The position numbers and the translations under genes are program-made. The notes under the pieces are model-generated. The model was not told where the DNA came from, did not search any database, and saw only the letters and a program-made list of their open reading frames with translations. A stretch of 64,000 nt of DNA. Origin: Iphione sp. A-MEVVRFRX5. Its lineage: Eukaryota. Where the stretch lies: NCBI GenBank assembly GCA_976226885.1, contig OZ320313.1, positions 29,698,001-29,762,000 on the forward strand, given 5' to 3'. Below are positions 19,412 through 63,452 of this stretch, one piece after another; the stretch's first letter is position 1; each line of letters begins with the position of its first letter.

Positions 19412-19462
19412 GTGTGTGTGTCTTTGTGTGTGTGTGTGTGTGTTTGTATGTGTATGTTTGTG
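19412..19462. repeat. Imperfect (TG)n upstream of the long DGK first exon
   Basis: Directly visible. Confidence 0.9.
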
Positions 19463-19607
19463 TGCCCCCCCACGAGAGGTGTGTGCATTTGTACGGACTT
19501 GATCCGCTTATTGTACCTGCAAGTATCGCTAATCTATACTTATCGACTTTTGAACCTTTTCATTCCCCGCACCTTCTGACTACGGTTCGCTCCACATTCA
19601 AGCATAC

Positions 19608-20884
19608 ATGGTTGCCTCGAACTCCAAGATGAACCTATTCAAGAAAGCCCGCTCGCGCTCACCGTCTTTCGACATTCCGAAGCTGTGTCTGTCCCGACAG
19701 AAGAGGACAGAAGTGCCGCCCACCGAGGCAAGCTCCAGCCAGGTCGACCCAAGTGGTGCGGCTGTCGCGGCAGGCACAGACCCGGGAACGTGCAACGACG
19801 ATGGTGCCGGCACCCTCCATCCTCCCACCTCCCCAGGTGCTGGCGGCAGCGGCGGCGTCGTCGGCGGCGGCGACAGCGATGCCGGGGGCGCCGCAGCTCC
19901 GTCCACTGGGGTCGTGGGCTGCGCCGGCGGCGTCGGTGGCGGAGTCGGTGGCGACGCGTCATCGTCTGGCGCAGGCGCCGGCACCGGCGGCGTGGGATCG
20001 TCGGCGTCGGTGAGCAGTGCCAGCCCAGCCAGTAGCAACGGCTCGGGCGGCCAGCTGGACGAGCGGCAGCGGCGGCGGCGGCGAGTCCCGGCCTCGAACA
20101 GTCTGGAGGTGCCGCACCTGCCGCGTATCCGGTCGTCGAGCTTTGACACGAGCACCTTGCACCACGAGGAGCAGGTCGCGGCCGACAACACTCTAGTCGT
20201 TCCCGAGGCCAGCTCCTACCGCTCCAAGTCGTTCGATGCCTCCTACAGCTCGGAGGAATACGTGTCGGACCGCGAGTCGTCGTCGTCCATCTTTCTAGCG
20301 CTGCCCAAGTATTACCGGCGCCGCTCGCTGGAGATCCCTCGCTTGTGTATCCACTGCGTACACCTTGAGGCGCTCTCTAGCCAGGAGAACACACCCACCT
20401 CGCCAGGCGGCAACAAGTTCGATCTAAACCGCATCAACAATTTCGCCTACGACTCGCTGGATGACTTCAGCAGCGACGACGACGATGACGACGAGGACGA
20501 TGAGGACTACGATGACGGTGGCGGTGCCGGTGGTAGCGGTGCTGGAAGCGGCGGCAGCGGAGGAAGCGGAAGTGCGGGAATGTGCGGCGTGAAGGTGTCG
20601 CTCACCCCGCCGCCCGATCCGTACGGGGCGCTGTCCCTGAGACCGAGCGAGGACCAGGGGTGCAGCGTGGTGACGTTGGCCGTGCCCATGTGGAAGCCGC
20701 GTTCCTCATCCGTCGACGCCGCCTACATGCAGGTCGGCCCCGTTTGCGACGAACGACGCGGCTCCTTTGACCCTGGAATGCTGGACGTGCCCAAACAGCC
20801 GCGCTCCTCATCAGTCGACGTAACGCTGCCCACCCCCGAGTCGTCACACTATAAGGCCATCACGAGTACCAAGGCTGAGGACAG
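19608..20884 (+). CDS. DGKZ/DGKI (rdgA): Diacylglycerol kinase type IV (zeta/iota, rdgA-like): long first coding exon encoding a disordered N-terminal extension
   Basis: 426-codon GC-rich ORF from ATG 19608 ending at donor AG|GTAAAT (GT at 20885), phase 2. It joins exon 57153 in frame (GAC AG+G AAA = D-R-K). Motifs NSLEVP, RSSSFD, RSKSFD, CIHCVHLE, RSSSVD and VTLPTPESSHYKAI parallel the Drosophila rdgA N-terminus as I recall it (NSLEVP, RSASFD, RSHSFD, CIHCHYLE, RSRSVDIVLPT..ARYKAL). Confidence 0.92.
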
Positions 20885-23800
20885 GTAAATCTCACACTCT
20901 TTACTTACACACGCCGGGACACACCTCGTCTCTTACCACCACACCGTGTGTGGTCTCCCTTTACCAGTGGTTTTTCTTCGATAGTGTCGCATACAGGATT
21001 GTTTATAGCACGTGTAGCACCTTCTGATAATCGTATGCCGGCTTCAGTAGATAGCCAGTCAATTTTATAGATGATAGCAGTGGTGACCTTGAGTCCTAGA
21101 CAACGTGCACATTTGTGGCTAAAGCCTTAATGTATTCTGCATAGCATTGCAGTGATAGGTCTACTGAACGATGGCTGGTTGCATTGTGCTACATGTGTTC
21201 CTTTTTAAGCCATATTCTATCAGCAACGATGCATTAGAATTGCCTTTGATCCATTGAAAAAAACACGTACCTGTGTATATTGTATAATTCATTTCCCGAA
21301 ACGAACAACGCTCGTCCCGTCACCACAAGATTGGTCGTTACTGTCATTGTTCTTATATAATAGAGTGGTAATTCAAGTTAGAAGTTAGAAATGTACAGGG
21401 CAGCCAGTCAGACTTCTGTTGTTCTGGTCTCGCATAGTAATTCCTTCTGGTTTTAAATAAACGAACATACGATCGCAATGCTCCTAACAACCTATTTAGC
21501 AAGCTGACATACTTTCTATTCTCGGCGACAAATAACACGAAGAGAGCCAAAAGTTACTACTTCCATGAGATCAACTTTAGTAGTCATTTTGGTATCAAAT
21601 TTTGTTGACCTATAATATTTAAGGAAGGGACCAGCTGGTTTTTATATTTTTAAAAAATTGCATTTCTAGTTTTCATATAATGAGTAAACAAATGCTTCCC
21701 ATCTTGATTTGCCTTGAAGAATGATATCGACCAATTAAGTCTAAAAAGATATTAAGCCATTCAGCGCTGTCGGACCCAGCAGTCAGTTACACGATACTCA
21801 TTTATTCAGTAATATACATCATAATCCTAGTGGGTCAATCCTACGGTAATGGTGGGCGGCGGTTTCTAAAGTGACTGGCGAAATGTGCAGCCATATTCAG
21901 ATAATTGGAAGTAGGGAACATTCTACAGACGTGTCCGGCTAGCGCTCGGCTCAGGACCACATAACTAACCCTTTCCATCACGAGAGTCTCTTCCGTTATC
22001 TTTCCTTCCTTGGCCCTTGGGCCCAAGGTACTCCCCGCTCTACTTTCAGAGTCTGTCAAGGACTCTGGCCAGCTTAAGCAAGTTCTGTACCTGTTAGGAA
22101 GTGCATGGCGTGCTGAGCCAGGAGAACAAGGCCGCCCGTGGTTGTTTGGATCGTATACTCAGTGCCCTTGGGTTTGTGAGTAACATTTAGGCTGTTAATA
22201 CCGACGTCACTCGATTACTAAGGGAGAAAGCGAGGACCGGCGTAAACTAGCAGTGGATGTCTTGCATGGGAAGTGACATTGATACCAGCAGGAAAAAAAA
22301 CAAGAGCGTAGCTGTGCATTGTCCAGCGTAGTACAATTTCTATCGTTAAGATGTATCGTCAATAGAACAGTCAGCAAGTCACCTTCGTCTTCGTTCTTGG
22401 TCAGCAGTTGTTATTCTACCATTTCTTCGCACCAGCCTCAACCATTGTCTGATGTTATATCGCCCTCTGCCTGTTTCAAGTAGAGGCAGTGCTCGTTTAT
22501 GTTGTCGTTTGATCATTGCCTTCCTGATTGGTGTCAATGACAAGACTTGCTAATGAACCTACTCAAAGGCGGGCTGCACTTACGCCGCAGGCCAGTCACT
22601 GGGAGCCACCCCCATCCTCGCAAGGTATTAGATGGCAGGACAAATTATTCTTCACATTTTAGATCGTGTCCTCCTTATCCTCCGTCTCCTCCTCTTCCAA
22701 GACATGCCATGGGTATTTGCTCTCGCTTGCATTTCGCAAATGTGCGTTCGGTGATAATTTATTCCGGAAATCGGAAATGGCTTCCCATCAGGCTTGTTAC
22801 CATTGGCTGTAGAGGTTTAATTGGATTCTAGCAGAGGTAATGGCGGTGGGGGAAGACCATTTGCTGGTAGAATTTTGTCTTTCTTGAACCGATATGCTAA
22901 TTTCATATCCAAATGCGGTTAACAGAACTACACTGAAAAAAGGAGGTCTACACACATTCTGCATTGCATACTTAGTTCCCCTTTCAACTCTAGGGAACAA
23001 TGAGTAAGTTGTGAGTGTCACTGGGTGTTCTTCTCCATGATTACTGCCAAGCACACTCAGAATTTCTACTGGTTGAGTGTTCCAGTGTCACAGAGCACTG
23101 CCTTCCTAGGTTGATGGATATTCCTCTGCCTTTACTTCACCCCTCCGCCAGGATCGTGAAGAAAGATGTCCCACTCCGCGGGTATTGTACATATAGTATA
23201 TGAATCTATACTACATGCTATGCACTTTCATATCCCCAAAAAATTGCGGGCGTTTGGTTGATTTAAAACTCTTACAGAGGATTTTAACCAAAATATGGTA
23301 CATAAGTGTGTGTGGTTATTAGTGGAGTTAAAACAAACTTGCTTTGTGGTTGCCTCCTATAGTACATATATATACTTCATTTTGATTAGTCCTTTAGATT
23401 TCTCGCCCTATTTGTTCATTACACTGCCTATAAAAAATCCCCCCAAACTAATCCATCCACATGAGGTCTTATCTCATAGTGAGGTCAATTCAGAAAAGTA
23501 TATTATTTATATTACTGAAGCGTACCCAGGGATACTTTAATAACCTCTTCCAGACTGACCCTAGGCTTATCGTACATATATGTATGATAATATTCAAGGT
23601 AGTTGTTAGATAATTGATCTTTTATGGACATTGGTCATTTTTAGCACACAGCAAGATCTTACTGTAAGCCACCAGCTTGTCCTTAGCTTTTGTAAAATAC
23701 ACTGGGTCACCATGGTAAAGCAGTCAAATGAACTGTAAGAATTCAGCATGTTTACATATGTTGATAGCATATGTTGACAGCATATTAATATTTCCATCCA

Positions 23801-26399: not shown

Positions 26400-27540
26400 A
26401 TCCCTAACTGTATAACGACTTTCACGGGTCCGGCACCCTGAGCATAACAAGCCAGCCTGTACGTAACATCACACAATCTAGCCGATCGTTTGACGTACCC
26501 CGGGCATTAATAACGCCCACCACCAATCCGAGGGCTTCAGGTGAACACGTGGAACGTGCTGTCGCCATCTCGGAGTCAGAACGATGGCCGAGGCGTTGGT
26601 AGTGATGATGATGGTTGTTACGGTGGCTGGAATGAAGTCGTTTTGTCATAGAAGTAAGGGTGATACAGAGGTGGAATGGTGATTCGGGAACGGGGTTGCT
26701 AGCGTTCGTTAAAATAACGGTTTTGACACCCAATGACGCAGGTGGTCACGATATACACGTGTAGTTGCTGGTGATGCTGATAGTGGTGTTTGCGCCCATC
26801 GTGCTGATAGTTCTTGGTATTTCAGGGGTGTTTGTTGAAGGGAAGGCAAGCCGGGTTGGGCGATTGGTTTTTAGGAGGGAGGGGACGGGGAGTGGTGTCG
26901 AGGACGGTGGTCCGGAGGGCGTAGATCCGGCTTGGATTTTTCGTCACTTTTAGCCGCCACGCTGGATGCTGATGATCCACCGAGACGCGTTAGATAGATG
27001 ATCGCCGGACCTGACTGGCCGTAGATCAAGCAGCTGCCTCCTCCACACATCCGCCTCGCTTTCTTATCATCGGCTGGCCTCCGCCCAAGCGTTCAGAACT
27101 GAACGCCGTCTACAGGCCCCCCACCACTGAACCCTTTCCAGCCCTGAATTTTACCCCTCCCTCCCTCCCTGCCCCCCACCAACCTTTTGGCTCGGTCCAT
27201 TTAAGTCCGAGCGGTTTCAGGATACGCGTTGGATGCCTATCTCATCGCCCAGCGCCTTATCCGTCAGCATGGTTCCGGTCCATATGCTCCCGGTTGTACC
27301 CGGTCCTTCTTGCTTCCGAGCTGTCTATAACGATTATCCCCATTTTTTTCTCCTCCTTCTTTTTCCACCAACTCATGCCCCCCGCGCCCTCCGCCTGTCT
27401 GCACCCTCTTGCCCACCTACCAACCTATTCACGTCGTATAAGCCACCCGCGACCAGCAGAGGCCTGTGAGCGATATCTTGGATAGGAGGGAGGGGTTGGC
27501 TAACTTAAGGGGCATGACCTGCTCACAAGCGAGCTGCTTC
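26400..27540. promoter_or_regulatory. Intronic CpG-rich island next to GA/GT microsatellites; promoter-like
   Basis: High CG density, C-rich and G-rich tracts, and (AG)n at 27568-27636. No transcript evidence. Confidence 0.35.
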
Positions 27541-37908: not shown

Positions 37909-37971
37909 TGCTCGTTACCCTACCGGCCGTCGTAACTCCCTCTCGGATTCGACCCGCCTGCTCACCGACGG
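37909..37971 (+). CDS. Candidate 63-nt symmetric (phase 2-2) cassette exon: ARYPTGRRNSLSDSTRLLTD(G)
   Basis: Acceptor TTGCCTGTTGTTGTCCGTGTTATAG (AG 37907-37908), donor GG|GTAAGT (37972). Length 1+60+2, open in the required frame, and codons mostly end in C/G. Confidence 0.55.
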
Positions 37972-54380: not shown

Positions 54381-57152
54381 ACCCTAGCAGCAGAGGAGAA
54401 TACCTTATTCTCCCTCTCAGTCTGACAGAGATGGAGATTAAACAATGAAGATAACAACCATCTAATGTAAATCTGAATTTTATCATCTTTTTTAATCTCA
54501 CGGTTGTCTGCGGAGAGACTTTACTAATATGTCACTTTATCTGAATTAACTCAGATTTTACTCTCCTTTTTCTCATGGACTCATTTTTGTAAATACACAA
54601 ATTTAGACCATTCAACTGTGATTTTTGTTTCAGACTTTCTACGACAAGGTCGTAACGTACCAGCTTCACCATGAGAATCTTTCTTCATTCGATAAATGCT
54701 ATCAATGCCTTCCATTTTCATTGGTACAGCGATTGAACCACAAATCGAGATGATCACCTGCAAAACCATATCTGGCCCATCTTGGAAGCCTGGACCATAA
54801 AAAATAATAGACTTTTGTCTATTTCATGTAGTATTTGAAGACAACACAGGTTTCCTATAATATCGTTCACTCCAACAGAGTTAGTCGAAAATATGCCCAA
54901 AACCACGGTATAAAGGCAACGAGTATCAATTTTATGTAATCTACAACAGTTTAGCCAACATTTCCTATGCTTATTTACCAATACCGACTCATTAAAACGC
55001 AACCCTACCGCAGTGCAGATGCTTTCTTACGCGTGCTGCACTCAATGCATGCCTGCGCAATGTTTCTATAGCATTTCATTTATGTCCATGTCCATATTTT
55101 TTTTAATTTGCTGTTCGTTGTTGCCATGGTCCTTAGGCTTCTGTAGGAGAGCTGAATTGTGATTGGTCAGTCTGGAGGTTTAGTAAAGCGGGCGACATTC
55201 AAAGGCCTGGCGGGGTGCGGACGTAGGCGGGTGGGTGATTGCGAGACTGCGGGGTAGACCTGTGCCTTGTGATTTGCCGTTCTGTAAATAGTCTGGCACG
55301 AGTGTGCATAGCGGTCACCAGACTGCATCATCCTCGCTGCCCCCACGCATTCCATCATCCCTTGTCGCTTCCAATAATCCTGGCACTGGCCCTGACGACC
55401 GCTTGACCTTGTCACCTCCACTGAATACGGCGGTTTGGACACTGCTACCGTACATCTGACCTTGGTCATTGAGCTCATGTTTCCTCCTGTTAGGCTTTAT
55501 TGTGTACGTCCTCAGGTCAGTATATGAGAAATATCTTGTGGCCGAGTTTTCCGATATTGAGCGTCACTTCCGCTGATGGTCGAGATAATACCGCCTCGAT
55601 TTCAACTTTTCAGGGCAGGTAGTTTAACAGTATTTAACCCTGACATCCTAACCCTGAATAATCAGTGAATTTATTGACTCCCTTAAATTAACTTGGGTAT
55701 TTAAAACGAATTTCCGTTCCAAAAAACGCGTTTTTTGCAGGTTTTATAAGGTTACTCAATGTAACGCTGTCATGTAGTGTTCCAAAGACCACTTTTAATG
55801 GGGATTATTACCTCAGTGTCACGCTGTGAAGTGATGGTTAGTCGCCCATCAAGCTGTTCATTGTCACAACATTTCCAAACCGAAATACATGTACATGCAC
55901 TTGCTAGATTCCTCCTGTGACTAACGATATCAATAGAACACCAACATTGGATTGGCACCTATCAGAATATTCTTTTGGTTTTGTTCTAAGTTTATCATAA
56001 TCATAATCATTCGCGATTTAGAGTCTGTAGCGTTTGTAATGTTTGAAATGCCAGTGTTGGTATGTAACTGTTGATGCTGTTATATAGGCCTACATGTGTG
56101 TATGGCCTTGAATTTTGCCTATATTTAATTATCTTTGTATATAGAACCTAATGTTTGAGTAACCCGTTACTTCGAGATTTTATATTATATTCAATGCGTT
56201 ATAGGTGTATGGTCCTGTTAGAGTGTCTTCTTTAGGTAGATTGTACTTTCAGTATTCAGTATATACAGCAATAGAAATATATGTTATAGCAGGTACAGTC
56301 AGAGATCCCCTTGCATGTACAACAGGGACCCATCGCTAAAGGCCTGTACGTGTAAAATTTAGATATTCATTGTAACTATAATGGAAGGCAAAGCCAGGGA
56401 CCGCATTTAACACCACTGTAGCATAGAAAGTGGTAGTGTCAACGATCCTCGTAGTCACAATGAGTAGAGAGCTACATTGGCTGGGAATTAACTGTTTAGA
56501 GCGCTTTTATGATGGCACTCGTCGCACGTTGTTTACCCATTTAAAATTTACATCTTTTTGCGTGTCTGTTCTGTGTATTTTCGTTATTCATATTCCCAGG
56601 GCTGCAACCATTTCATCGAGTGCCAGAATGAAGCTTTGCAATAAAACGCTAGCAACAAATAAAGTCGCTTGGGGAAAAAAACCCACCCTGCTTAAAGTTG
56701 TCAGTTTACCAGATCGGATTTTATAGCGCTCGTCAGTCAGATGTTCGTGGCTTTAATGAAGGGAGACATGACAAGAATTTGCTGCGTTCCCAGTTTGGCC
56801 AATTCGAGCGAGCTGTTGATTCTGTGTACCGTGTCGTACAAATAATGTTTGACAAGCAACTAATCAGGAGCTGACTTTTCATTCCTGTCCGACACATTCA
56901 TCAATTTAATGTATTTTATGATCATAAAATCATATGGTGAGGTTGACATGAACCATTGGGTTAATATGACAGGGGACTGTAACTAACTTAATGACTGGCC
57001 TATACCTCTGGAGCAATTGCATATTCTGAAAGACCACCGGTTGTATAGCCGTGCCCAAAAATACATCCCGCGCCGTCCGAGCTTTTTGTTCTTCATGTTT
57101 AAACAGATCATGAAATCGTTGTAGATTAATGTTTGCCTTTATCTTTTTTCAG

Positions 57153-57261
57153 GAAAGCCATCTCAAAAAGTTGTCAAGACAACAACGACCTGTTACATCC
57201 GCGCCATGCTGAAATCGGCTACACAAAAAAGAAGGAGATTCGATCCACCGTAGATTGGACG
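57153..57261 (+). CDS. DGKZ/DGKI (rdgA): DGK type IV common exon 2: (R)KAISKSCQDNNDLLHPRHAEIGYTKKKEIRSTVDWT
   Basis: Polypyrimidine tract + AG at 57151-57152; donor GTACGT at 57262; 109 nt, phase 2 to 0. RKAISKS...IRSTVDW matches DGKZ RKAITKS...IRSTVDW. Confidence 0.96.
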
Positions 57262-58715
57262 GTACGTCAAATTGTCGTCTGCTTCTGGTCAACTATAAAT
57301 TTTAGTCCCAGAAACGAAAAATGACTTCATTGAAGTTATCCTATCATGGGTATCTATTAAGTAGGTAGTCTCTTCTATGATAGCGTTGTAAGTGCTGATA
57401 TCATCCTTGGCGTGTAAGCAATCTAATTAAAGCTTCTATTTGAAGACGGCATTAAACGAATTCCAGTAGATTAATGGTCTTAACGAACATTGGTGCATTC
57501 TTAGGGTAACTCCCCTGCAACCAACTATGGAGGGCTTTGGAGCTTTTGTATTTATCTAATTACACCCATACGCCACGTCAATACTGGTATAATTTGTTTC
57601 CTGGTGCCTCTCTCGCTTTTCAAATTACGCATTCCCTCAAAATTGGATAGCTGCGTCCCACCGCATTACACGAACAAGGAACGTAGGGAATATAAAATGA
57701 ATTAGTCTTGATATAAGGACGTCTCGCGACAGCATACCGTGAGGAATTGCTATTTAAATACAACAGAATACTCGACCCATGAATATAAGATGCGCCAGCG
57801 AACATTGATATAAATATCACTGGGCAAAAAGCGGGTAAATTTCTTTAGAGGCTGGTGCTACCATGTCAGCCTCTTCAATTTACAATAAATAAAAACGTCG
57901 AGTTTCTCTGAGTGGCAGTTTGATGTTCCCGTTATTCATGTCGCCGCCATTAGGTGGCGTAAACGATGGGATCTGTTAGCGATATTATTAATGCAACCAG
58001 TCAGTTACAGCGCCGATAGAAACTTTGTCGACAGTGGACTACTCAGATATGACCAAATGTGTAGGTACCCAGAAAAAGATAATGATTAATTTGTCATTGC
58101 ACAAATTCTGTCCAACGTAAACCATTAATGAAGATGTTAGTTATGTAATTTAATTTTTTTTTGGGGGGGGGGGAGGAAATAATACGGTGGGGCGAAAACA
58201 CATTGTTAAGTTACTCCTACGTTTTTACATGTAAGGTATATTATCTCTATATTATCCATTTTACGGCCGTGATTATACACGATGTGAGGAAAGAGTTTAA
58301 ATAACTCAAGATGCGGCATTGTCAGAAAAGACGTTTTCCAAACCATTATAAACGCAGTACATACGTCAATACACATGGGGAAAAACTGATGTACGGACAG
58401 GAGATCCTAAGGCAGACGTGCCAATTCGCACTCTTCCACACCATAAGTAGATTATATTACTTTTTTCCATTCAGAACTAAAGGTGCTATTTTGTGCAGTT
58501 TTTTTAAGTGTATCAAGAGTAAAACTTGCGGATGCAAATTATGGAATAAAGACATGCTTTCCACGAGCTGTTGTTAGTATCTCGAATTGATAAGTTCGTG
58601 TGCTAGAGGCAGCTGCTTCATCCTAAGCATGCGTTCCAGACCAAGATAAGATTGGCCGCGGGTAGTGACACATATATCACGCGTGTATAATCTGTTCTCC
58701 CCTTTTATGCTGTAG

Positions 58716-58799
58716 GAAAGTGCCATTAACGGTGACCATATATGGGTGGATACGAATGCATCGGGTGACTTTTGCTACGTCGGAGAATCTCAGTGCTTG
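58716..58799 (+). CDS. DGKZ/DGKI (rdgA): DGK type IV exon 3, start of C1a: [28 protein letters not shown]
   Basis: CCTTTTATGCTGTAG acceptor, GTAAGT donor at 58800, 84 nt phase 0-0. Matches DGKZ [27 protein letters not shown]. Confidence 0.97.
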
Positions 58800-59631
58800 G
58801 TAAGTGTCCCCGTCCCGAGGAGAAAGACGATTGTTTACTGCGATTCTCTATCCGACGAACCTAAGAACCTCGCCCGCTCTGGTTGCGGCCTGATAGTCGG
58901 TTACATGAATAGGCTTTCAGGCCAGCGGCCTGAAAAGACTTGCCTTACCAGGATCTCTGATCGTTTACATGTACGTCGAAGCAAACCCCTGAAGCGGAAA
59001 TGAGAACATCTCAATACTTTCAGCAGAAAACATCTCTCTGTGGGCGGAGTTGTCACTTACCTTGGCCTGCTGTCCACGCCCTGAGATATCCCTACAAGCA
59101 AGAGCAATTCAAACTCTAAGACCTTGTTAACCAAGCATATTTACTTGCGACTCTCTCTAAGATTACAAAAAAGGTCGTGCCGTCCCATAGAAAGTGCAGT
59201 AATAAATGGACACAAGTCTCATTAATACTTGCTATTCTAAACTTGTGCTAGCATGGGTGTTCACACTAGACATTCTCCCAGGCTGTTAGCAACAGCTTGA
59301 GGTCAGCCATAAAATAATATGAAAAATTGGCTTTCAGTGTATGTATCTAGTCTTTGAAGGAAGGGGTAACTGTTAACAGGGTTCCCGCAGTTTATATCAC
59401 TGAAATGTTTATACAGTTTTGATATGGACAATATTTCAAACTCAAATTCAAGTGTTCTTATTAACCACCTCATACACAAACAGAGTTGTTCATGGTTAAC
59501 CATATGATTTCCTCTCAGCAGAGATAGTGCGATTTCAGAGATGATTTCGTTACTGAGCGTGTCTCTGCGTGGGTTGCTACAGTATATGTCAATATATGCA
59601 TGTATTTGGATGGTAATTATATGGTTGTTAA

Positions 59632-59958
59632 GGCCAAAAGAATAGGTGCGTTTCTGGTAACAACCACCCAAAAACATAGGTAGGGACGGGGTATCTTTGA
59701 TTTTCTTTCCACTTTCTTCCTCTGGTTTTCAATAATAATAAAGATAATATGAAGAAATTTGACCAATTTGCAGTTTTTTGCTGAACTTCCATGGATTTTG
59801 TCGTTTTTCTACTGAATTTACCAAAAACATGTGCTGTGAAAACACATATCTAAGAAAATTCAGCCTTGGAAACTCTTCAGGACCAAAAAATGTTTTAGGT
59901 AAGGTGAGGTTTTACTAGGTAGGGGTGGGTTACCAGAAACACACCTATTTTTTTGGCC
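59632..59958. mobile_element. PIF/Harbinger (Tourist-like) MITE
   Basis: About 30-bp terminal inverted repeats (GGCCAAAAGAATAGGTGCGTTTCTGGTAAC / GTTACCAGAAACACACCTATTTTTTTTGGCC) with TAA target-site duplication (59629-59631, 59959-59961). Non-coding interior. Confidence 0.85.
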
Positions 59959-60110
59959 TAAGTAATACTGAAAGAGCATCTCTTACCCATGATTCTCGAA
60001 CTGTGTCTCTTGCAGGCGTAGATGTTAGGCTTAGATTGCTGAGGTAATAGGTACAGTCCCTGTTCCCTTGACATTACGTCGTAACTCAATATTGCCTTAC
60101 TGCATAAAAA

Positions 60111-60340
60111 TTCAATTCAATTCAATTCAAATTATGTTTATTGAGCAATAAGAAACCACCTGTATCCAGGTGTTTTACAACCTATCACTCAGTCTTTACC
60201 ATATACATACATATATTGGCTGGTATTACCATAACCACGTCTGAACACGGAACCGACAGGAATACATTAATAGTATATCCCATTCCCCTATGTACCATGC
60301 GTGATGCATAACTGTTTTCTAGTCTTTATATAATTATGCT
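60111..60340 (-). mobile_element. 3' end fragment of a second LINE (CR1-like)
   Basis: On the minus strand, AATAAA (60137-60142) is followed by a (TTGAA)4 tail (60111-60130). Upstream lies a short RLENSYASRMVH reading reminiscent of a LINE ORF2 C-terminus. Confidence 0.5.
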
Positions 60341-61787
60341 TGCCTCGGAAAGATTTTACATTTTGAAGCTTGCAAAAGACGGTCACCCGGTCTCGTGGTG
60401 TAAGTAGTTTAATGAAGCGTTACTTTGCAGCAGGCTACATTTACGTAGTAGTATATGAATCGACATTTTTGAAAATATTTTTAAAAGGCCGTCCGCATTT
60501 AGATATCGTCAGATATCCCGATGATGGGTCAGTGGTGTAAGCGATATGTTTTCTTAGATTTTATTCTGTACGCTAATGATTTGAGGGGCCGTGGGAGGCC
60601 TTGTTCGCAATCTGCGCATTACATTCATCATAGAAGCAGGTCAACAACAGCGATTTGTAAACGGAATCGTATAGAAATAAACAGAATGTGTGACTGCTTT
60701 CCCATTGCCGTCAACTATTACCTTGCGTGATGAATTAAGTCATGAAATGCCATTTTCTCCCATGAAATTGAATTATTGATTACTGGAATTTTAACGGAAT
60801 GAGATCTTATTAATGGACTTAACAACCCTCAATTGGTTGAATTAACATTAGTGTGAAAAAGGTAGCCGGGTTTCTTTCCCTCGCAAGAACCACTTGTTTA
60901 TCATGAAGAGTCGACGTTTTCATGCGGCTCCCAGAGGGTCTGTTTGCTACGGGCTTCATCCACGAGTGCACAGGTTGATGTGGAACAGGATTGTGGCGCA
61001 TGAGCAGTTCACAGTCATGCCGGAATTATCATAATAGTACTGAGACCATCGTCAGTTCATCGAGTTTCGGATGACTTTGGGGTACGGTGCTCAGCAAAGG
61101 GAGCCTATACCATAACGACGGGATGAAGAGATACCCTAGATGTTTTGTTGAAGGAAATTAGGCTTACAAAATGCCAAAGAGCAAACTGAAAGTCCATTCT
61201 ATGATTAAAATCCTAGCGGAACTTGAGGTATAACCGTGCATATAGGATTTATTTGAGAGGTGGCATTATCATTCATACATGCATATATGTACACTTATAG
61301 GCAGTAGGGACTCTACCCCTATTTCCAATATTATGACGTTGCATTCTCATCTTTCTGACCGTTGTTGGAAAACCTTTTGTAATAATCCAAATGCGATTCA
61401 TTAGTTTTATCTTAAATCATTTTCTGTTAATTGAACCTGTTCCGTAATAACTTTTCTACGTGCTGTAAACCCTATGATGAAAATCTGTTCTATTGGTCGT
61501 TCTCTTCCAGTTCTATTTACATGTAATTATTTAAGAGATATTTTTCTCTATCAGTGCAATATATTGGGAATGCCGATGAAATATTTTCTAGATGCGTAAT
61601 AACCGCGAACATTGGAATGATCGTTTTTATAGTAGCCGTAGAAATTTATTGGAACCAGCAGTTTCTCACAAGTTAAACATTACTCATACATTTCCCTTTT
61701 GTTTCCCCTCCCCCTTTTGAAAACCCTTTCTGCTAATACTGTCCTCTTTCATCTCTCCTCCTCTGCTTTACCTCAATCTTCTGGCAG

Positions 61788-61862
61788 AAGAGCGGACCGA
61801 GGAAGAAGTGCGCCGCATGCAAAATCCTCATCCACACCGGTTGTATGGTGCAGCTCGACTCG
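61788..61862 (+). CDS. DGKZ/DGKI (rdgA): DGK type IV exon 4, C1a core: KSGPRKKCAACKILIHTGCMVQLDS
   Basis: Long pyrimidine tract + CAG (61785-61787), donor GTATGT at 61863, 75 nt phase 0-0. CxxC...HxxC zinc ligands as in DGKZ RRKCAACKIVVHTPC. Confidence 0.97.
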
Positions 61863-62983
61863 GTATGTATGCCATAGCATTCGGCTTTTAGTGATCACCT
61901 AACACCTTCTGGTACTGCACTCTAATGCCTGTATGTATGTATGTATGTACGCGTAAATATGTGTGTATGTATGCTGGGGCAACATAGAAGCATAGAGAAA
62001 GACAATGCGAGAAATATCTATTATCCATCAAAGAGAAATCTTGGGTGCACAACGAACCGGCCTTTGTGGAAGTGTAGCAGATAAGAGAGAAGGCTTTCGT
62101 GAAAGTCTAGATGTAGAATGGATTATTCATGTGTAACTGGCAGATAAAAGATCAAGTATCATATAATGTGTGGCCTGACGTCTTATGTGGTGAAATATAA
62201 AATGTCTTGTAGACTTTGTCTTGTTTGGTCAGTGTCCTTTAAATGTTAAATGTTCCTCTTCAGTTTGCAATATTCTTAAAGGTTTCACCTTACTTGTGGT
62301 ACTTGCATTGCCTTTAGACATTTGTTTTCAGTATTATCCCCTCCCCGTGAATTTGACTGTAGCCTAAGCAGATCTGTGCTGCCGGCATAACAAAGTTTTC
62401 CTCGGGCTAGTTGACGAGCTTAGGTTGATCTGTCAAGTTATATTAAATTAAATGTTTGGCTGTATATGTTATCCTGAAGCTCGTGCTTCGGTTTTCATAA
62501 CCTGCCAAATAATAGGACGTGCACATCGAAGCTCGCGTTTGTTTGAGCCTGCTTTCAACGTAGCATTACCAGAACTAATCTCCGTGTCTCTCTACGCTTC
62601 ACGATTTTACGCATCGTGATAGAAATGGTAACTCTTTGTGACGGTGGCAGGATTAGACGTATTGCCTGGAGGCCCGTCACTAAAGATGATTGGCTTTTTG
62701 ACCGGATAACATAATTAGTTTCCCCGTGGCCAGAGACGGCGTGTCCGTGTGAAATGTCTGGAGATGGATAGGTTAGATGGGTGGCGGCCCAGGCACATTC
62801 CAAGTCCGAAAAATAGGACCTGCCAATTAGCAGCGTGTCGCGCTCATTAAGAGTTGCCAGTCTGTTGGTCGGCAAGGCTGTTTACCAGGCCAACTGGTGA
62901 GTCGCATTTATCCACGCTCCATCAGCTGTCAATTCTTCCTCTAGTCTATCTCTTTTTTTATTTTTCCTTTTCCGCTGGGATAG

Positions 62984-63040
62984 ATCAACTTCAAATGCAA
63001 ACCTACGTTCAGGGAGGCAGGTCCGCGCAACTACCGGGAG
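62984..63040 (+). CDS. DGKZ/DGKI (rdgA): DGK type IV exon 5: INFKCKPTFREAGPRNYRE
   Basis: T-rich tract + TAG (62981-62983), donor GTAAGG at 63041, 57 nt phase 0-0. Matches DGKZ/DGKI INFRCKP(S/T)FRE. Confidence 0.97.
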
Positions 63041-63383
63041 GTAAGGCAGTCATTTTCTCTCCGCCGAGAACAAAGCAACCAGCCATCCAATAAAATGCCC
63101 CATCCATCATTATTCATTTGACTACACCGTCGGTTTCTCATTACAATTATGTATTTGTGACCGTGGGCGAGACAACATTTCCTTGTGTATCGACTGTTTT
63201 ACAGACAAAGGAGTGGATTACTTTTTTTGAAACCACTGTGAAGCTTGCTTTCAAAGAATTAGAATGAAAATAATCAATGTAGTCTGATAAGTACCTGAAG
63301 GTAGTGGAGGTTAGATTGCCTTTTCTGCGTTAACGTCATGAACAATCCTTTAACGACCATTTTTTATCATTGCTCATCCACAG

Positions 63384-63452
63384 CAAACATTCATGCGGCA
63401 TCACTGGGTCCACCGGAGGCGGCAAGATGGGAAATGTAAACAGTGTGGAAAG
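63384..63452 (+). CDS. DGKZ/DGKI (rdgA): DGK type IV exon 6, start of C1b: [23 protein letters not shown]
   Basis: CATCCACAG acceptor, GTGAGT donor at 63453, 69 nt phase 0-0. Near-identical to [20 protein letters not shown](D/E)GKC..CGK. Confidence 0.98.

What the first reader, a model, noticed from the sequence alone, without database searches (positions are those of the whole stretch)
20103..20819. Tandem LxVP + RxxS modules: a putative calcineurin/kinase phospho-switch array on a DAG kinase
The sequence shows a repeated unit with near-fixed spacing: SLEVP(169)..RSSS(178)FD; TLVVP(199)..RSKS(208)FD; FLALP(233)..RRRS(240)LEIP; TLAVP(360)..RSSS(368)VD; YMQVGP(378)..RRGS(386)FD; MLDVP(395)..RSSS(402)VD, plus RSPSFDIP at the N-terminus. 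The serine is always 7-9 residues after the proline. Established: LxVP is a calcineurin docking motif, and RxxS/RRxS are PKA/CaMKII-type sites that are often bound by 14-3-3. Inference: the tail is a multisite Ca2+/cAMP-controlled switch coupling calcineurin to DAG-to-PA conversion. I recall similar LxVP...RxxS pairs in rdgA, and I am not aware of this being described as a repeat module.
Basis: partly seen in the sequence, partly recalled or inferred. Interest (0 to 1): 0.8.

Follow-up and report, generated by a model that had tools for sequence, protein, structure and literature searches.

The report
Conserved phospho-docking array on DAG kinase
The first coding exon of a zeta/iota/rdgA-type diacylglycerol kinase encodes a mostly disordered region with four to five copies of a paired motif (LxVP, then R-S-x-S-hydrophobic-Asp 7-10 residues later) that is kept from molluscs and annelids to fly rdgA, so it is a real regulatory module and a testable candidate link between calcium signalling and lipid signalling; calcineurin binding itself is unproven.

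Summary
ORF 19608-20884(+) encodes 426 aa with 7 copies of RxxS[FVL][DE], 6 of L.[VIL]P and 5 LxVP-to-RxxS pairs spaced 7-9 residues. Shuffles expect 0.08, 0.24 and 0.01.

The exon belongs to a type IV DGK. Core exons lie at 57153-63452, the splice phase fits, and full-length mollusc "DGK zeta-like" proteins map collinearly across exon and core.

An exhaustive search found 65 relatives, including molluscs, an annelid and a fly rdgA fragment. In a 64-sequence alignment the motif residues are islands of conservation (0.79 against 0.39, p=3e-15). The x of LxVP varies freely. Spacing within a unit is fixed (median 7-9), while spacing between units varies up to 4-fold. AlphaFold2 predicts disorder around most units.

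The layout matches proven calcineurin substrates: PKA-RII, TAK1 (spacing 14) and calcimembrin (spacing 8).

Not shown: calcineurin binding, which kinase acts, and whether 14-3-3 binds. The region is N-terminal, not a tail. The cAMP link is weak, because most sites are RSxS rather than RRxS.

No paper in the searched library links a DGK with calcineurin and LxVP. Two first-reader notes on this same window (s1-325172, s1-325252) describe the exon array and a cassette exon. The motif array itself was not noted before.

The parts
19608..20884 (+). First coding exon (426 codons, the last one split) of a type IV DGK isoform. The start is ATG at 19608, or more likely the conserved Met8 at 19629. The donor is CAG|GTAAAT, with GT at 20885-20886.
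   Evidence: It is by far the longest ORF in the window (426 aa; the next longest is 197 aa, on the opposite strand of the same exon). It has 65 homologues. Met8 is conserved in at least 90% of sequences. Mollusc DGK proteins map collinearly across it.
19656..19691 (+). Unit U0 (aa 17-28): R-S-P-S20-F-D-I-P-K-L-C-L. A phosphosite is followed directly by an LxVP-like/PxIxIT-like composite.
   Evidence: It is conserved in lophotrochozoan sequences and absent in fly sequences.
20100..20147 (+). Unit U1 (aa 165-180): S-LEVP-x5-R-S-S-S178-F-D.
   Evidence: Column counts are L 55/61, V 53, P 57, R175 62/63, S178 63/63 and D180 62/63. Both halves are kept in 51/63 sequences. Median spacing is 9.
20190..20237 (+). 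Unit U2 (aa 195-210): T-LVVP-x5-R-S-K-S208-F-D.
   Evidence: Column counts are L 56/62, V 55, P 57, R 49/53, S208 51/56 and D 55/57. The i-1 residue is K, H or R in 42/56. Sequences meeting the strict pi-phi-LxVP rule: 27/64.
20292..20369 (+). Unit U3 (aa 229-254): F-LALP-KYY-RRR-S240-LEIP-R-L-C-I-H-C-V-H-L-E. It is a hybrid unit: LxLP, an RRxS site, a second LxIP/PxIxIT-like stretch, and an invariant C-x-H-C.
   Evidence: S240 is present in 61/64 sequences. C247, H249 and C250 are invariant in 64/64 and H252 is present in 51/64. A helix at 248-260 is predicted with pLDDT 74-86.
20667..20717 (+). Unit U4 (aa 354-370): V-V-T-LAVP-x2-K-x-R-S-S-S368-V-D.
   Evidence: Column counts are L357 62/63, V359 59, P360 59, K363 56/61, R365 59/62, S368 58/62 and D370 59/62. 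Both halves are kept in 56/63 sequences. Spacing is 8-9 in 54 of 59 sequences. The fly version reads YLAVP.
20754..20771 (+). Unit U5 (aa 383-388): R-R-G-S386-F-D. A phosphosite without a conserved LxVP.
   Evidence: R383 is present in 44/60, S386 in 48/62, and the full motif is kept in 32/63. It is replaced by acidic residues in flies.
20778..20834 (+). Unit U6 (aa 391-409): M-LDVP-KQP-R-S-S-S402-V-D-V-x-L-P-T.
   Evidence: Column counts are R399 57/61, S402 60/61, V403 51, D404 54, L407 53/59, P408 56 and T409 55. LxVP is kept in 33/63 sequences. Median spacing is 7. pLDDT is above 80 for about aa 395-420.
37909..37971 (+). Candidate 63-nt cassette exon (…G-R-R-N-S-L-S-D…). It has AG/GT borders and keeps the reading phase between exon 1 and the 57153 exon.
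Evidence: Sequence and phase were read. There is no expression evidence.
57153..57261 (+). First common DGK exon (R-K-A-I-S-K-S … S-T-V-D-W-T). Its first G completes the split codon AG|G of exon 1.
   Evidence: tblastn shows mollusc DGK residues contiguous with those matching the end of exon 1.
58716..58799 (+). DGK core exon, the start of the first C1 domain (…D-H-I-W-V-D-T-N-A-S-G-D-F-C-Y-V-G-E…).
61788..63452 (+). Further C1-domain exon pieces matched by tblastn at 61788-61859, 62987-63040 and 63381-63452. The exon borders were not determined.

Best explanation
The exon encodes the N-terminal regulatory extension of one isoform of a type IV (zeta/iota/rdgA-type) diacylglycerol kinase. Apart from one short helix and a short C-terminal piece, it is disordered.

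It carries an ancient array of short linear motifs. Four units have the form [hydrophobic/polar]-L-x-V-P, then 3-5 residues, then R-S-x-S-hydrophobic-Asp. There is also one hybrid unit and two further R-x-x-S-hydrophobic-acidic sites.

The most likely mechanism has three steps:
1. The serines are phosphorylated by basophilic kinases. R at -3, a hydrophobic residue at +1 and an acidic residue at +2 fit CaMKII best. Units with K/R at -5 also fit RxRxxS-type AGC kinases.
2. Each upstream LxVP docks Ca2+/calmodulin-activated calcineurin at its CNA/CNB pocket. This places the serine 7-10 residues downstream at the catalytic site, as in PKA-RII, TAK1 and calcimembrin.
3. The summed phosphorylation state of the array sets an output of the kinase, such as binding of a phospho-reader like 14-3-3 (the RSxpS core), membrane or contact-site localisation, or activity.

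Shown here: the motifs, their statistical excess, their attachment to a DGK IV, their conservation and fixed internal spacing from molluscs and annelids to flies, and predicted disorder.

Inferred: phosphorylation, the identity of the kinase, calcineurin docking, and the output.
For: - Motifs and excess over chance.
- DGK IV context: C1 exons are in the window. The splice phase is compatible. The full-length Argonauta protein P0031 has C1_1, DAGK_cat, DAGK_acc, DGKI and Ank domains after the homologous N-terminus. Twelve further annotated mollusc DGK zeta-like proteins matched this N-terminal region. tblastn gives a collinear mapping.
- Conservation: 65 homologues. Motif columns score 0.79 against 0.39 for other well-occupied columns, p=3e-15. 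L, V and P are kept while x is free (0.28-0.44).
- Module integrity: P-to-S spacing has medians of 7-9 with a CV of 0.09-0.19 in four of the five units (0.42 in U2). Inter-unit spacing ranges from 72 to 321 residues.
- Fly rdgA-type sequences have an aromatic residue at -1 (FLQVP, FLEVP, YLAVP, FLTVP).
- Disorder: pLDDT is below 50 around the U1, U2 and U4 sites.
- Precedents: RII is an LxVP-containing calcineurin substrate (PMC12612047). Phosphosites lie C-terminal to LxVP in 80% of predicted substrates, as in RII (PMC5156906). A TAK1 co-crystal shows 422-LDVP-425 in the LxVP pocket and 436-RRRpS-439 at the active site at the same time (PMC13022171). In calcimembrin, 33-LDVP-36 directs dephosphorylation of pT44, a spacing of 8 (PMC12612047).
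- Calcineurin counteracts basophilic kinases and favours a basic i-1 residue. U2 and U3 have K/H/R at i-1.
- Curated CaMKII sites favour R at -3, a hydrophobic residue at +1 and D/E at +2 (10.1101/2020.10.25.354241).
Against: - No binding, phosphorylation or expression data could be obtained. No RNA run was listed.
- L.[ILV]P alone is a weak predictor: there are 13,014 unvalidated matches in the human proteome.
- The strict pi-phi-LxVP rule is met by only 4-27 of 64 sequences per unit. That rule does, however, miss 16 of 25 validated motifs.
- The PxIxIT-like stretches (PKLCLS, PRLCIH) are not kept in flies.
- For U6 the phosphosite is kept much more often than its LxVP (55 against 33 of 63), so the two halves are not strictly co-dependent.
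- CaMKII sites normally have a hydrophobic residue at -5 and disfavour extra serines. These units have K/R or polar residues at -5 and a conserved Ser at -2.
- From memory, not checked here: early peptide studies reported that acidic residues just C-terminal to the phosphosite disfavour calcineurin. The conserved +2 Asp would then work against this reading.
Confidence: 0.45

Rival explanations
1. The array is a multisite phospho-switch read by 14-3-3 or another phospho-reader. The conserved L-x-V-P elements serve a partner other than calcineurin, for example a docking site for the kinase that writes the neighbouring serine, or one extended motif of about 16 residues read by a single unknown domain.
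For: The conserved core R-S-x-S, with Ser at -2 kept in 39-59 sequences per unit, matches the 14-3-3 mode-I core RSxpS (the motif definition is from established knowledge). The very tight coupling of the two halves would also be expected for one long composite motif. The flanks at -1/-2 of LxVP deviate from the structure-based calcineurin rule in most lophotrochozoan sequences.
Against: No reader of L-x-V-P other than calcineurin is known to me. The +2 position is Asp/Glu, not the Pro of the canonical 14-3-3 mode I. The LxVP-then-basophilic-site layout is exactly that of RII and TAK1. A 14-3-3 output is compatible with, not exclusive of, calcineurin as the eraser.
Confidence: 0.3
2. The units are structural or intramolecular. 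They fold onto the DGK core or onto membranes, for example as pseudo-substrate-like or autoinhibitory strands or as a metal-bound mini-domain, and their conservation reflects packing rather than docking of signalling enzymes.
For: Invariant C247, H249 and C250 with H252 lie on a confidently predicted helix. Residues about 395-420, which include U6, are predicted with pLDDT above 80.
Against: U1, U2 and U4 lie in segments with pLDDT below 50. Conservation is confined to 3-4 spaced residues per half-unit, with free intervening positions and highly variable inter-unit linkers. This is the signature of linear motifs, not of a fold. No Pfam family matches.
Confidence: 0.1
3. The pattern is a chance or compositional effect in a Ser/Arg/Pro-rich low-complexity ORF, or the ORF is not a coding exon of the DGK.
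For: The exon contains long G/A/S and D/E low-complexity runs built from trinucleotide repeats. No RNA evidence was available.
Against: No shuffle out of 20,000 reached the observed counts. Orthologous units are conserved position by position in 64 sequences from at least three phyla. Annotated full-length DGKs contain the module.
Confidence: 0.02

Closest known systems
PKA regulatory subunit RII (the classic calcineurin substrate, the 'RII peptide')
   Same: An LxVP motif is followed on the C-terminal side by a basophilic R-R-x-S site in a disordered segment. LxVP recruits calcineurin and the downstream serine is dephosphorylated (PMC12612047; PMC5156906; PMC13022171).
   Different: RII has a single unit, an RRxS site and a spacing of about 10 (spacing from my memory of the peptide sequence). 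Here there are four to five units, mostly RSxS with a conserved +2 Asp and a spacing of 7-10, on a lipid kinase. Binding is untested.
TAK1/MAP3K7 C-terminal disordered region (LDVP 422-425 plus RRRpS439; PDB 9NXF)
   Same: One chain occupies the LxVP pocket and the active site together. Basic residues before the serine add affinity. LDVP is followed by a PxIxIT-like stretch, as in the LEIP-R-L-C-I-H stretch here.
   Different: The spacing is 14 with a flexible 6-residue linker. TAK1 has a single unit and an Arg at i-1, which only U2 and U3 here commonly have.
Calcimembrin/C16orf74 composite LxVPxIxIT motif
   Same: The LxVP-to-phosphosite spacing is 8 and dephosphorylation depends on LxVP. A contiguous LxVP and PxIxIT-like sequence shares a proline, compare FDIP-KLCL and LEIP-RLCI here.
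   Different: In calcimembrin the phospho-Thr lies after the composite motif and strengthens PxIxIT binding. Here the serine lies immediately before the composite motif, and the composite is missing in flies.
MARCKS-homology phosphorylation domain of vertebrate DGK zeta
   Same: It is a multisite serine phospho-switch in a disordered part of a type IV DGK (established knowledge, not tested here).
   Different: It has a different position (between the C1 and catalytic domains), a different sequence (a basic K/S-rich PKC site cluster), and no LxVP pairing.
Kinase / 14-3-3 / calcineurin switches such as CRTC, BAD, TFEB and KSR2
   Same: The logic is the same: a basophilic kinase writes RxxS, 14-3-3 reads it, and Ca2+-activated calcineurin erases it (established knowledge).
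   Different: Those proteins have one or two sites and usually dock calcineurin through PxIxIT. Here the array is regular, with a docking motif next to each site.

Membership tests
Type IV diacylglycerol kinase (DGK zeta/iota, Drosophila RDGA) | Two C1 domains, then DAGK catalytic and accessory domains, then C-terminal ankyrin repeats. | tested here: inconclusive
   Only the first C1-region exons lie inside the window (58716-63452). Orthologue P0031, which has the homologous N-terminus, has C1_1, DAGK_cat, DAGK_acc, DGKI and Ank domains. The rest of this gene lies beyond the window.
Type IV diacylglycerol kinase (DGK zeta/iota, Drosophila RDGA) | The N-terminal exon is physically joined to the DGK core in the mRNA. 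| tested here: inconclusive
   The splice phase fits (AG|G gives Arg). Annotated mollusc isoforms are collinear across exon 1 and the core exons. No RNA run was listed for this genome.
Calcineurin LxVP docking motif | Core L-x-[VIL]-P. | tested here: met
   There are six matches in the exon. L, V and P are kept in 53-62 of about 61-63 residues per column at U1, U2 and U4, while x is variable.
Calcineurin LxVP docking motif | Located in an intrinsically disordered, cytosolic region. | tested here: met
   AlphaFold2 with 64 sequences gives a mean pLDDT of 50 and values below 50 next to or between the U1, U2 and U4 motifs. DGK IV is cytosolic or peripheral to membranes (established knowledge).
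Calcineurin LxVP docking motif | Flanks of the structure-based definition: [NQDESRTH]-[YTDFILV]-L-x-[VPL]-[PK]. | tested here: inconclusive
   The rule is met by 28/64 sequences at U2 but only 4-11/64 at the other units. Fly sequences have an aromatic residue at -1. The rule itself misses 16 of 25 validated motifs.
Calcineurin LxVP docking motif | Binds the CNA/CNB hydrophobic pocket, and binding is lost on LxVP mutation or with FK506/CsA. | not testable with these tools
   No complex modelling or binding assay was available.
RII/TAK1-type substrate unit (LxVP with a downstream basophilic phosphosite) | The phosphosite lies C-terminal to LxVP within reach of the active site (8-14 residues in proven cases), with R at -3. 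| tested here: met
   Median spacing is 7-9, mostly within 7-10, and R at -3 is kept in 49-62 sequences. The precedents are 8 for calcimembrin and 14 for TAK1.
Calcineurin PxIxIT docking motif | P-x-[FILV]-x-[FILV]-x, conserved. | tested here: inconclusive
   PKLCLS (aa 24) and PRLCIH (aa 244) match the loose regular expression, and 57/64 sequences have some match. These stretches are replaced in fly sequences, and the Cys/His residues may be conserved for another reason.
14-3-3 mode-I site (R-S-x-pS-x-P) | R at -3 and S at -2. | tested here: met
   R-S-x-S is kept at U1, U2, U4 and U6.
14-3-3 mode-I site (R-S-x-pS-x-P) | Pro at +2. | tested here: not met
   The +2 position is Asp/Glu in all units (D in 54-62 sequences at U1, U2, U4 and U6).
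CaMKII substrate consensus | R at -3, a hydrophobic residue at +1 and D/E at +2. | tested here: met
   All seven sites in the window meet this, and it is conserved. The consensus is taken from 10.1101/2020.10.25.354241.
CaMKII substrate consensus | A hydrophobic residue at -5, with extra serines disfavoured. | tested here: not met
   The -5 position is R/K at U1 and U4, G/S at U2 and Q at U6. Ser at -2 is conserved (compared).

The most novel reading that the evidence does not exclude
Type IV DAG kinases of protostomes, including fly RDGA, are direct multivalent calcineurin substrates. Each of four to five LxVP motifs hands its own neighbouring phosphoserine to the phosphatase. Ca2+ entry would then rewrite the phosphorylation state of the DGK N-terminus and so tune DAG-to-PA conversion. 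This would be an ancient Ca2+ feedback onto PLC signalling, dating at least to the common ancestor of flies and molluscs, that has gone unnoticed in phototransduction.
Probability: 0.4. Interest if true: 0.75.

Novelty: new member of a known kind. Interest (0 to 1): 0.55.

Why it matters
How type IV DGKs are switched is poorly understood. In Drosophila photoreceptors RDGA is needed for normal light responses, and its loss causes excessive TRP-channel activity and retinal degeneration (PMC6559011). That review does not discuss the N-terminal region or any Ca2+-dependent control of RDGA.

This finding offers a concrete handle: a position-by-position conserved array of docking-plus-phosphosite units at the N-terminus. 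Mutating the LxVP motifs or the serines in rdgA rescue constructs would test whether Ca2+/calcineurin, and an opposing basophilic kinase, regulate DAG removal.

It would also add a lipid kinase, and an unusually regular multi-unit layout, to the calcineurin substrate network. It would be a natural test case for how LxVP-to-phosphosite spacing governs dephosphorylation.

Tried and rejected
- Pfam scan of the exon and of ten homologues: no family matched the N-terminal region.
- RNA evidence: the look-up of sequencing runs listed no run, so read laying was not used and the exon 1 to 57153 junction rests on phase and orthologue collinearity only.
- Literature: searches for rdgA or DGK with calcineurin and LxVP, for rdgA phosphoproteomics, and for the CaMKII optimal peptide string all returned nothing. 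A broader rdgA search gave no paper on the N-terminal region.
- A recent DNA tandem duplication as the origin of the units: rejected.
- Chance or composition: rejected.
- Considered by eye and rejected because key positions do not fit: FFAT or phospho-FFAT (VAP-binding), PP1 RVxF, PP2A-B56 LxxIxE, SxIP, MAPK D-motif, SH3 PxxP (not conserved), and the PKD/AMPK requirement for a hydrophobic residue at -5.
- An ORF fragment at 26408-26599 containing RSFDVP was inspected and shows no exon features.
- Cluster name look-ups for 30 homologues gave names for only seven. The taxonomic range beyond molluscs, one annelid and one dipteran, and the species of the window, remain undetermined. Nothing can be said about presence or absence in deuterostomes.
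- Co-loss of LxVP and its serine across homologues is not significant on the counts.
Full report
**1. What is in the sequence**

The + strand ORF 19608-20888 (426 codons) is by far the longest ORF in the 64-kb window; the next longest, 197 aa, lies on the opposite strand of the same exon. It ends in a canonical donor, CAG|GTAAAT, with GT at 20885-20886, so the exon proper is 19608-20884 and its last codon is split after two bases.

- RSPS20-FDIP
- LEVP169 … RSSS178-FD
- LVVP199 … RSKS208-FD
- LALP233 … RRRS240-LEIP
- LAVP360 … RSSS368-VD
- RRGS386-FD
- LDVP395 … RSSS402-VD

The proline-to-serine distances are 7-9.

In 20,000 shuffles of the same residues the expected counts are 0.08 for RxxS[FVL][DE] (7 observed), 0.24 for L.[VIL]P (6 observed) and 0.01 for LxVP followed by RxxS (5 observed). 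No shuffle reached the observed values, even when only the motif-rich segments were shuffled.

Tandem Repeats Finder detects only trinucleotide low-complexity runs, not the units. The repetition is therefore not a recent DNA duplication.

**2. Is it on a DAG kinase?**

Yes, as far as can be told without RNA.

Downstream on the same strand lie exons with clear type IV DGK sequence:
- 57153-57261 (R-K-A-I-S-K-S … S-T-V-D-W-T)
- 58716-58799 (D-H-I-W-V-D-T-N-A-S-G-D-F-C-Y-V-G-E)
- C1-domain pieces at 61788-61859, 62987-63040 and 63381-63452 ([18 protein letters not shown])

The split codon of exon 1 (AG) is completed by the first G of the 57153 exon. A 63-nt candidate cassette at 37909-37971 also keeps the phase.

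An exhaustive phmmer search of 1.84 billion representatives found 65 relatives, with homology over aa ~160-426. One of them, P0031 from Argonauta ("diacylglycerol kinase zeta-like", 1185 aa), has the homologous N-terminus followed by C1_1, DAGK_cat, DAGK_acc, DGKI and ankyrin domains.

A word search seeded with its first 330 residues found 12 more annotated mollusc DGK zeta-like proteins and one unnamed Logan protein; nearly all carry the full type IV domain set, and the match covers the whole region only in Octopus, the oysters and Pinctada. The genera are Octopus, Crassostrea, Ostrea, Saccostrea, Pinctada, Mytilus, Argopecten, Haliotis and Gigantopelta.

tblastn of these proteins on the window gives a collinear path: 19629-20912, then 57151-57261, 58716-58841, 61788-61859, 62987-63040 and 63381-63452.

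No RNA run could be listed for this genome, so the junction itself is inferred.

**3.

Named relatives come from:
- cephalopods, bivalves and gastropods (Lottia, Elysia, Plakobranchus)
- the annelid Capitella
- the fly Stomoxys, whose entry is named "Eye-specific diacylglycerol kinase", the name of RDGA

In a 64-sequence alignment (A1) the mean column identity is 13%. The motif residues stand out against that background:
- R175, S176, S178, D180, S240, L357, V359, P360, R365, S368, D370 and S402 are at least 90% conserved.
- L, V and P of U1, U2 and U4 are kept in 53-62 sequences per column.
- The x of LxVP is free, with a top-residue frequency of 0.28-0.44.

Motif columns average 0.79 top-residue frequency against 0.39 for the other well-occupied columns (Mann-Whitney p=3e-15).

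Both halves of a unit are retained together in 51 (U1), 40 (U2), 32 (U3), 56 (U4) and 32 (U6) of 63 homologues.

Spacing within units is held: the medians are 9, 8, 8, 8 and 7, with a CV of 0.09-0.19 in four of the five units and 0.42 in U2. Linkers between units vary widely. For example, the distance from S240 to L357 ranges from 72 to 321 residues.

In fly rdgA-type sequences the units read SLEVP…RSASFD, FLQVP…RSHSFD, FLEVP…RR-SS, YLAVP…RAASVD and FLTVP…RSRSVD. These have an aromatic residue before the Leu, as in classical calcineurin motifs.

The array dates back at least to the common ancestor of flies and lophotrochozoans.

**4. Structure**

AlphaFold2 with the 64-sequence alignment gives a mean pLDDT of 50. 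Values fall below 50 around the U1, U2 and U4 phosphosites. Only a helix at 248-260 and residues ~395-420 are confident.

This fits linear motifs in a disordered region, with two small possibly ordered elements.

**5. How it most likely works**

The conserved site R-S-x-S-hydrophobic-Asp is a basophilic kinase site.
- Curated CaMKII sites favour R at -3, a hydrophobic residue at +1 and D/E at +2. They also favour a hydrophobic residue at -5 and disfavour extra serines, which these units do not satisfy (one search compared).
- U1, U4 and U0 have K/R at -5, the RxRxxS type preferred by several AGC kinases (established knowledge).
- Only U3 and U5 are RRxS, the PKA-like type.
- The R-S-x-S core is that of 14-3-3 mode I, but the +2 residue is Asp, not Pro.

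For the eraser, calcineurin is the only known reader of LxVP. The layout here is the one proven for its substrates:
- The RII peptide is an LxVP-containing substrate.
- 80% of predicted substrates have the phosphosite C-terminal to LxVP, "similar to RII".
- In the TAK1 co-crystal, 422-LDVP-425 sits in the LxVP pocket while 436-RRRpS-439 sits at the active site. Binding strictly requires LxVP and is strengthened by the basic site.
- In calcimembrin, 33-LDVP-36 promotes dephosphorylation of pT44, eight residues after the proline.
- Calcineurin favours a basic i-1 residue, and U2 and U3 commonly have K/H/R there.

On this basis I give the following estimates:
- about 0.9 that this is a functional, conserved regulatory motif array of a DGK IV isoform
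- about 0.8 that the serines are phosphosites
- about 0.5 that at least some LxVP elements dock calcineurin
- 0.45 for the whole model

**6. Evidence against, and limits**

- L.[ILV]P alone is a weak predictor: there are 13,014 unvalidated human matches.
- The structure-based flank rule is met by a minority of sequences. That rule does miss 16 of 25 validated motifs.
- The PxIxIT-like stretches PKLCLS and PRLCIH are not kept in flies. Joined to the preceding FDIP and LEIP, they resemble the composite LxVPxIxIT of calcimembrin and TAK1.
- At U6 the site is kept more often than its LxVP.
- From memory only: acidic residues just after a phosphosite were reported to disfavour calcineurin.
The cAMP link is weak.

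**7. Novelty**

No paper in the searched library combines DGK or rdgA with calcineurin and LxVP. A review of RDGA biology does not mention the N-terminal region. No Pfam model covers the region.

In kind, this is a new candidate member of the class of LxVP-directed calcineurin substrates. It is notable for the regular, four-to-five-fold, anciently conserved pairing of dock and site on a lipid kinase. The claim is a well-supported prediction, not a demonstration.

**8. Housekeeping**

The window contains no N. No broken toxin or viral sequence is involved. Earlier first-reader notes on this window (exon array s1-325172, cassette s1-325252) agree with what I found. A follow-up note elsewhere in the genome suggested a mollusc-like animal (s1-334824). 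That is compatible with the lophotrochozoan-type U0 and U3 units here, but the species was not identified.

Noticed in passing
window 20346-20363 (aa 247-252): C247, H249 and C250 are invariant in all 64 aligned sequences and H252 is present in 51/64 (C-x-H-C-x-H). They lie at the start of the only confidently predicted helix (248-260). This may be a metal-binding or otherwise structural element inside the otherwise disordered exon. No other explanation was found.
   Followed up: partly
window 19668-19694 and 20328-20354 (aa 21-29 and 241-249): There are two copies of a second unit type: phospho-Ser, then hydrophobic-[DE]-[IV]-P-[KR]-L-C-[LI]. It reads as a contiguous LxVP-like plus PxIxIT-like composite sharing a proline, like calcimembrin LDVPDIIIT and TAK1 LDVPEIVIS. 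It is conserved in molluscs and the annelid but lost in fly sequences.
   Followed up: partly
window 19728-20087 (aa 41-160): A Gly/Ser/Ala-rich insert of about 120 residues, built partly from GGC-type trinucleotide repeats, is absent from essentially all homologues (alignment occupancy near 0). It is a lineage-specific low-complexity expansion inside the exon.
   Followed up: partly
window 20454-20516 (aa 283-303) and about 20244-20279 (aa 213-224): An Asp/Glu run (CGA/GAC repeats) has high alignment occupancy. A conserved acidic Ser cluster (consensus S-S-D-x-x-x-S-D-x-E) lies between U2 and U3. These are possible acidophilic (CK2-type) sites that add to the phospho-array.
   Followed up: no
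window 20811-20870 (aa 402-421): The exon end S-V-D-V-x-L-P-T … Y-K-A is highly conserved and predicted with pLDDT above 80. The 'Y-K-A-I-T-S' here resembles the 'R-K-A-I-S-K-S' at the start of the next common exon (57153).
   Followed up: no
window 37909-37971: A 63-nt candidate cassette exon has AG/GT borders, preserves the phase, and encodes another basophilic site (G-R-R-N-S-L-S-D). There is no expression or orthologue evidence for it. The mollusc isoforms examined join the exon-1 homologue directly to the 57153-exon homologue.
   Followed up: partly
window 19412-19464: A (GT)n microsatellite lies about 150 bp upstream of the start codon, in the putative 5' UTR or promoter region.
   Followed up: no
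window 19598-20191 (- strand) and overlapping + frames: Several long ORFs overlap in other frames and on the opposite strand (up to 197 aa). They are by-products of the GC-rich repeat composition, and none has support.
   Followed up: partly
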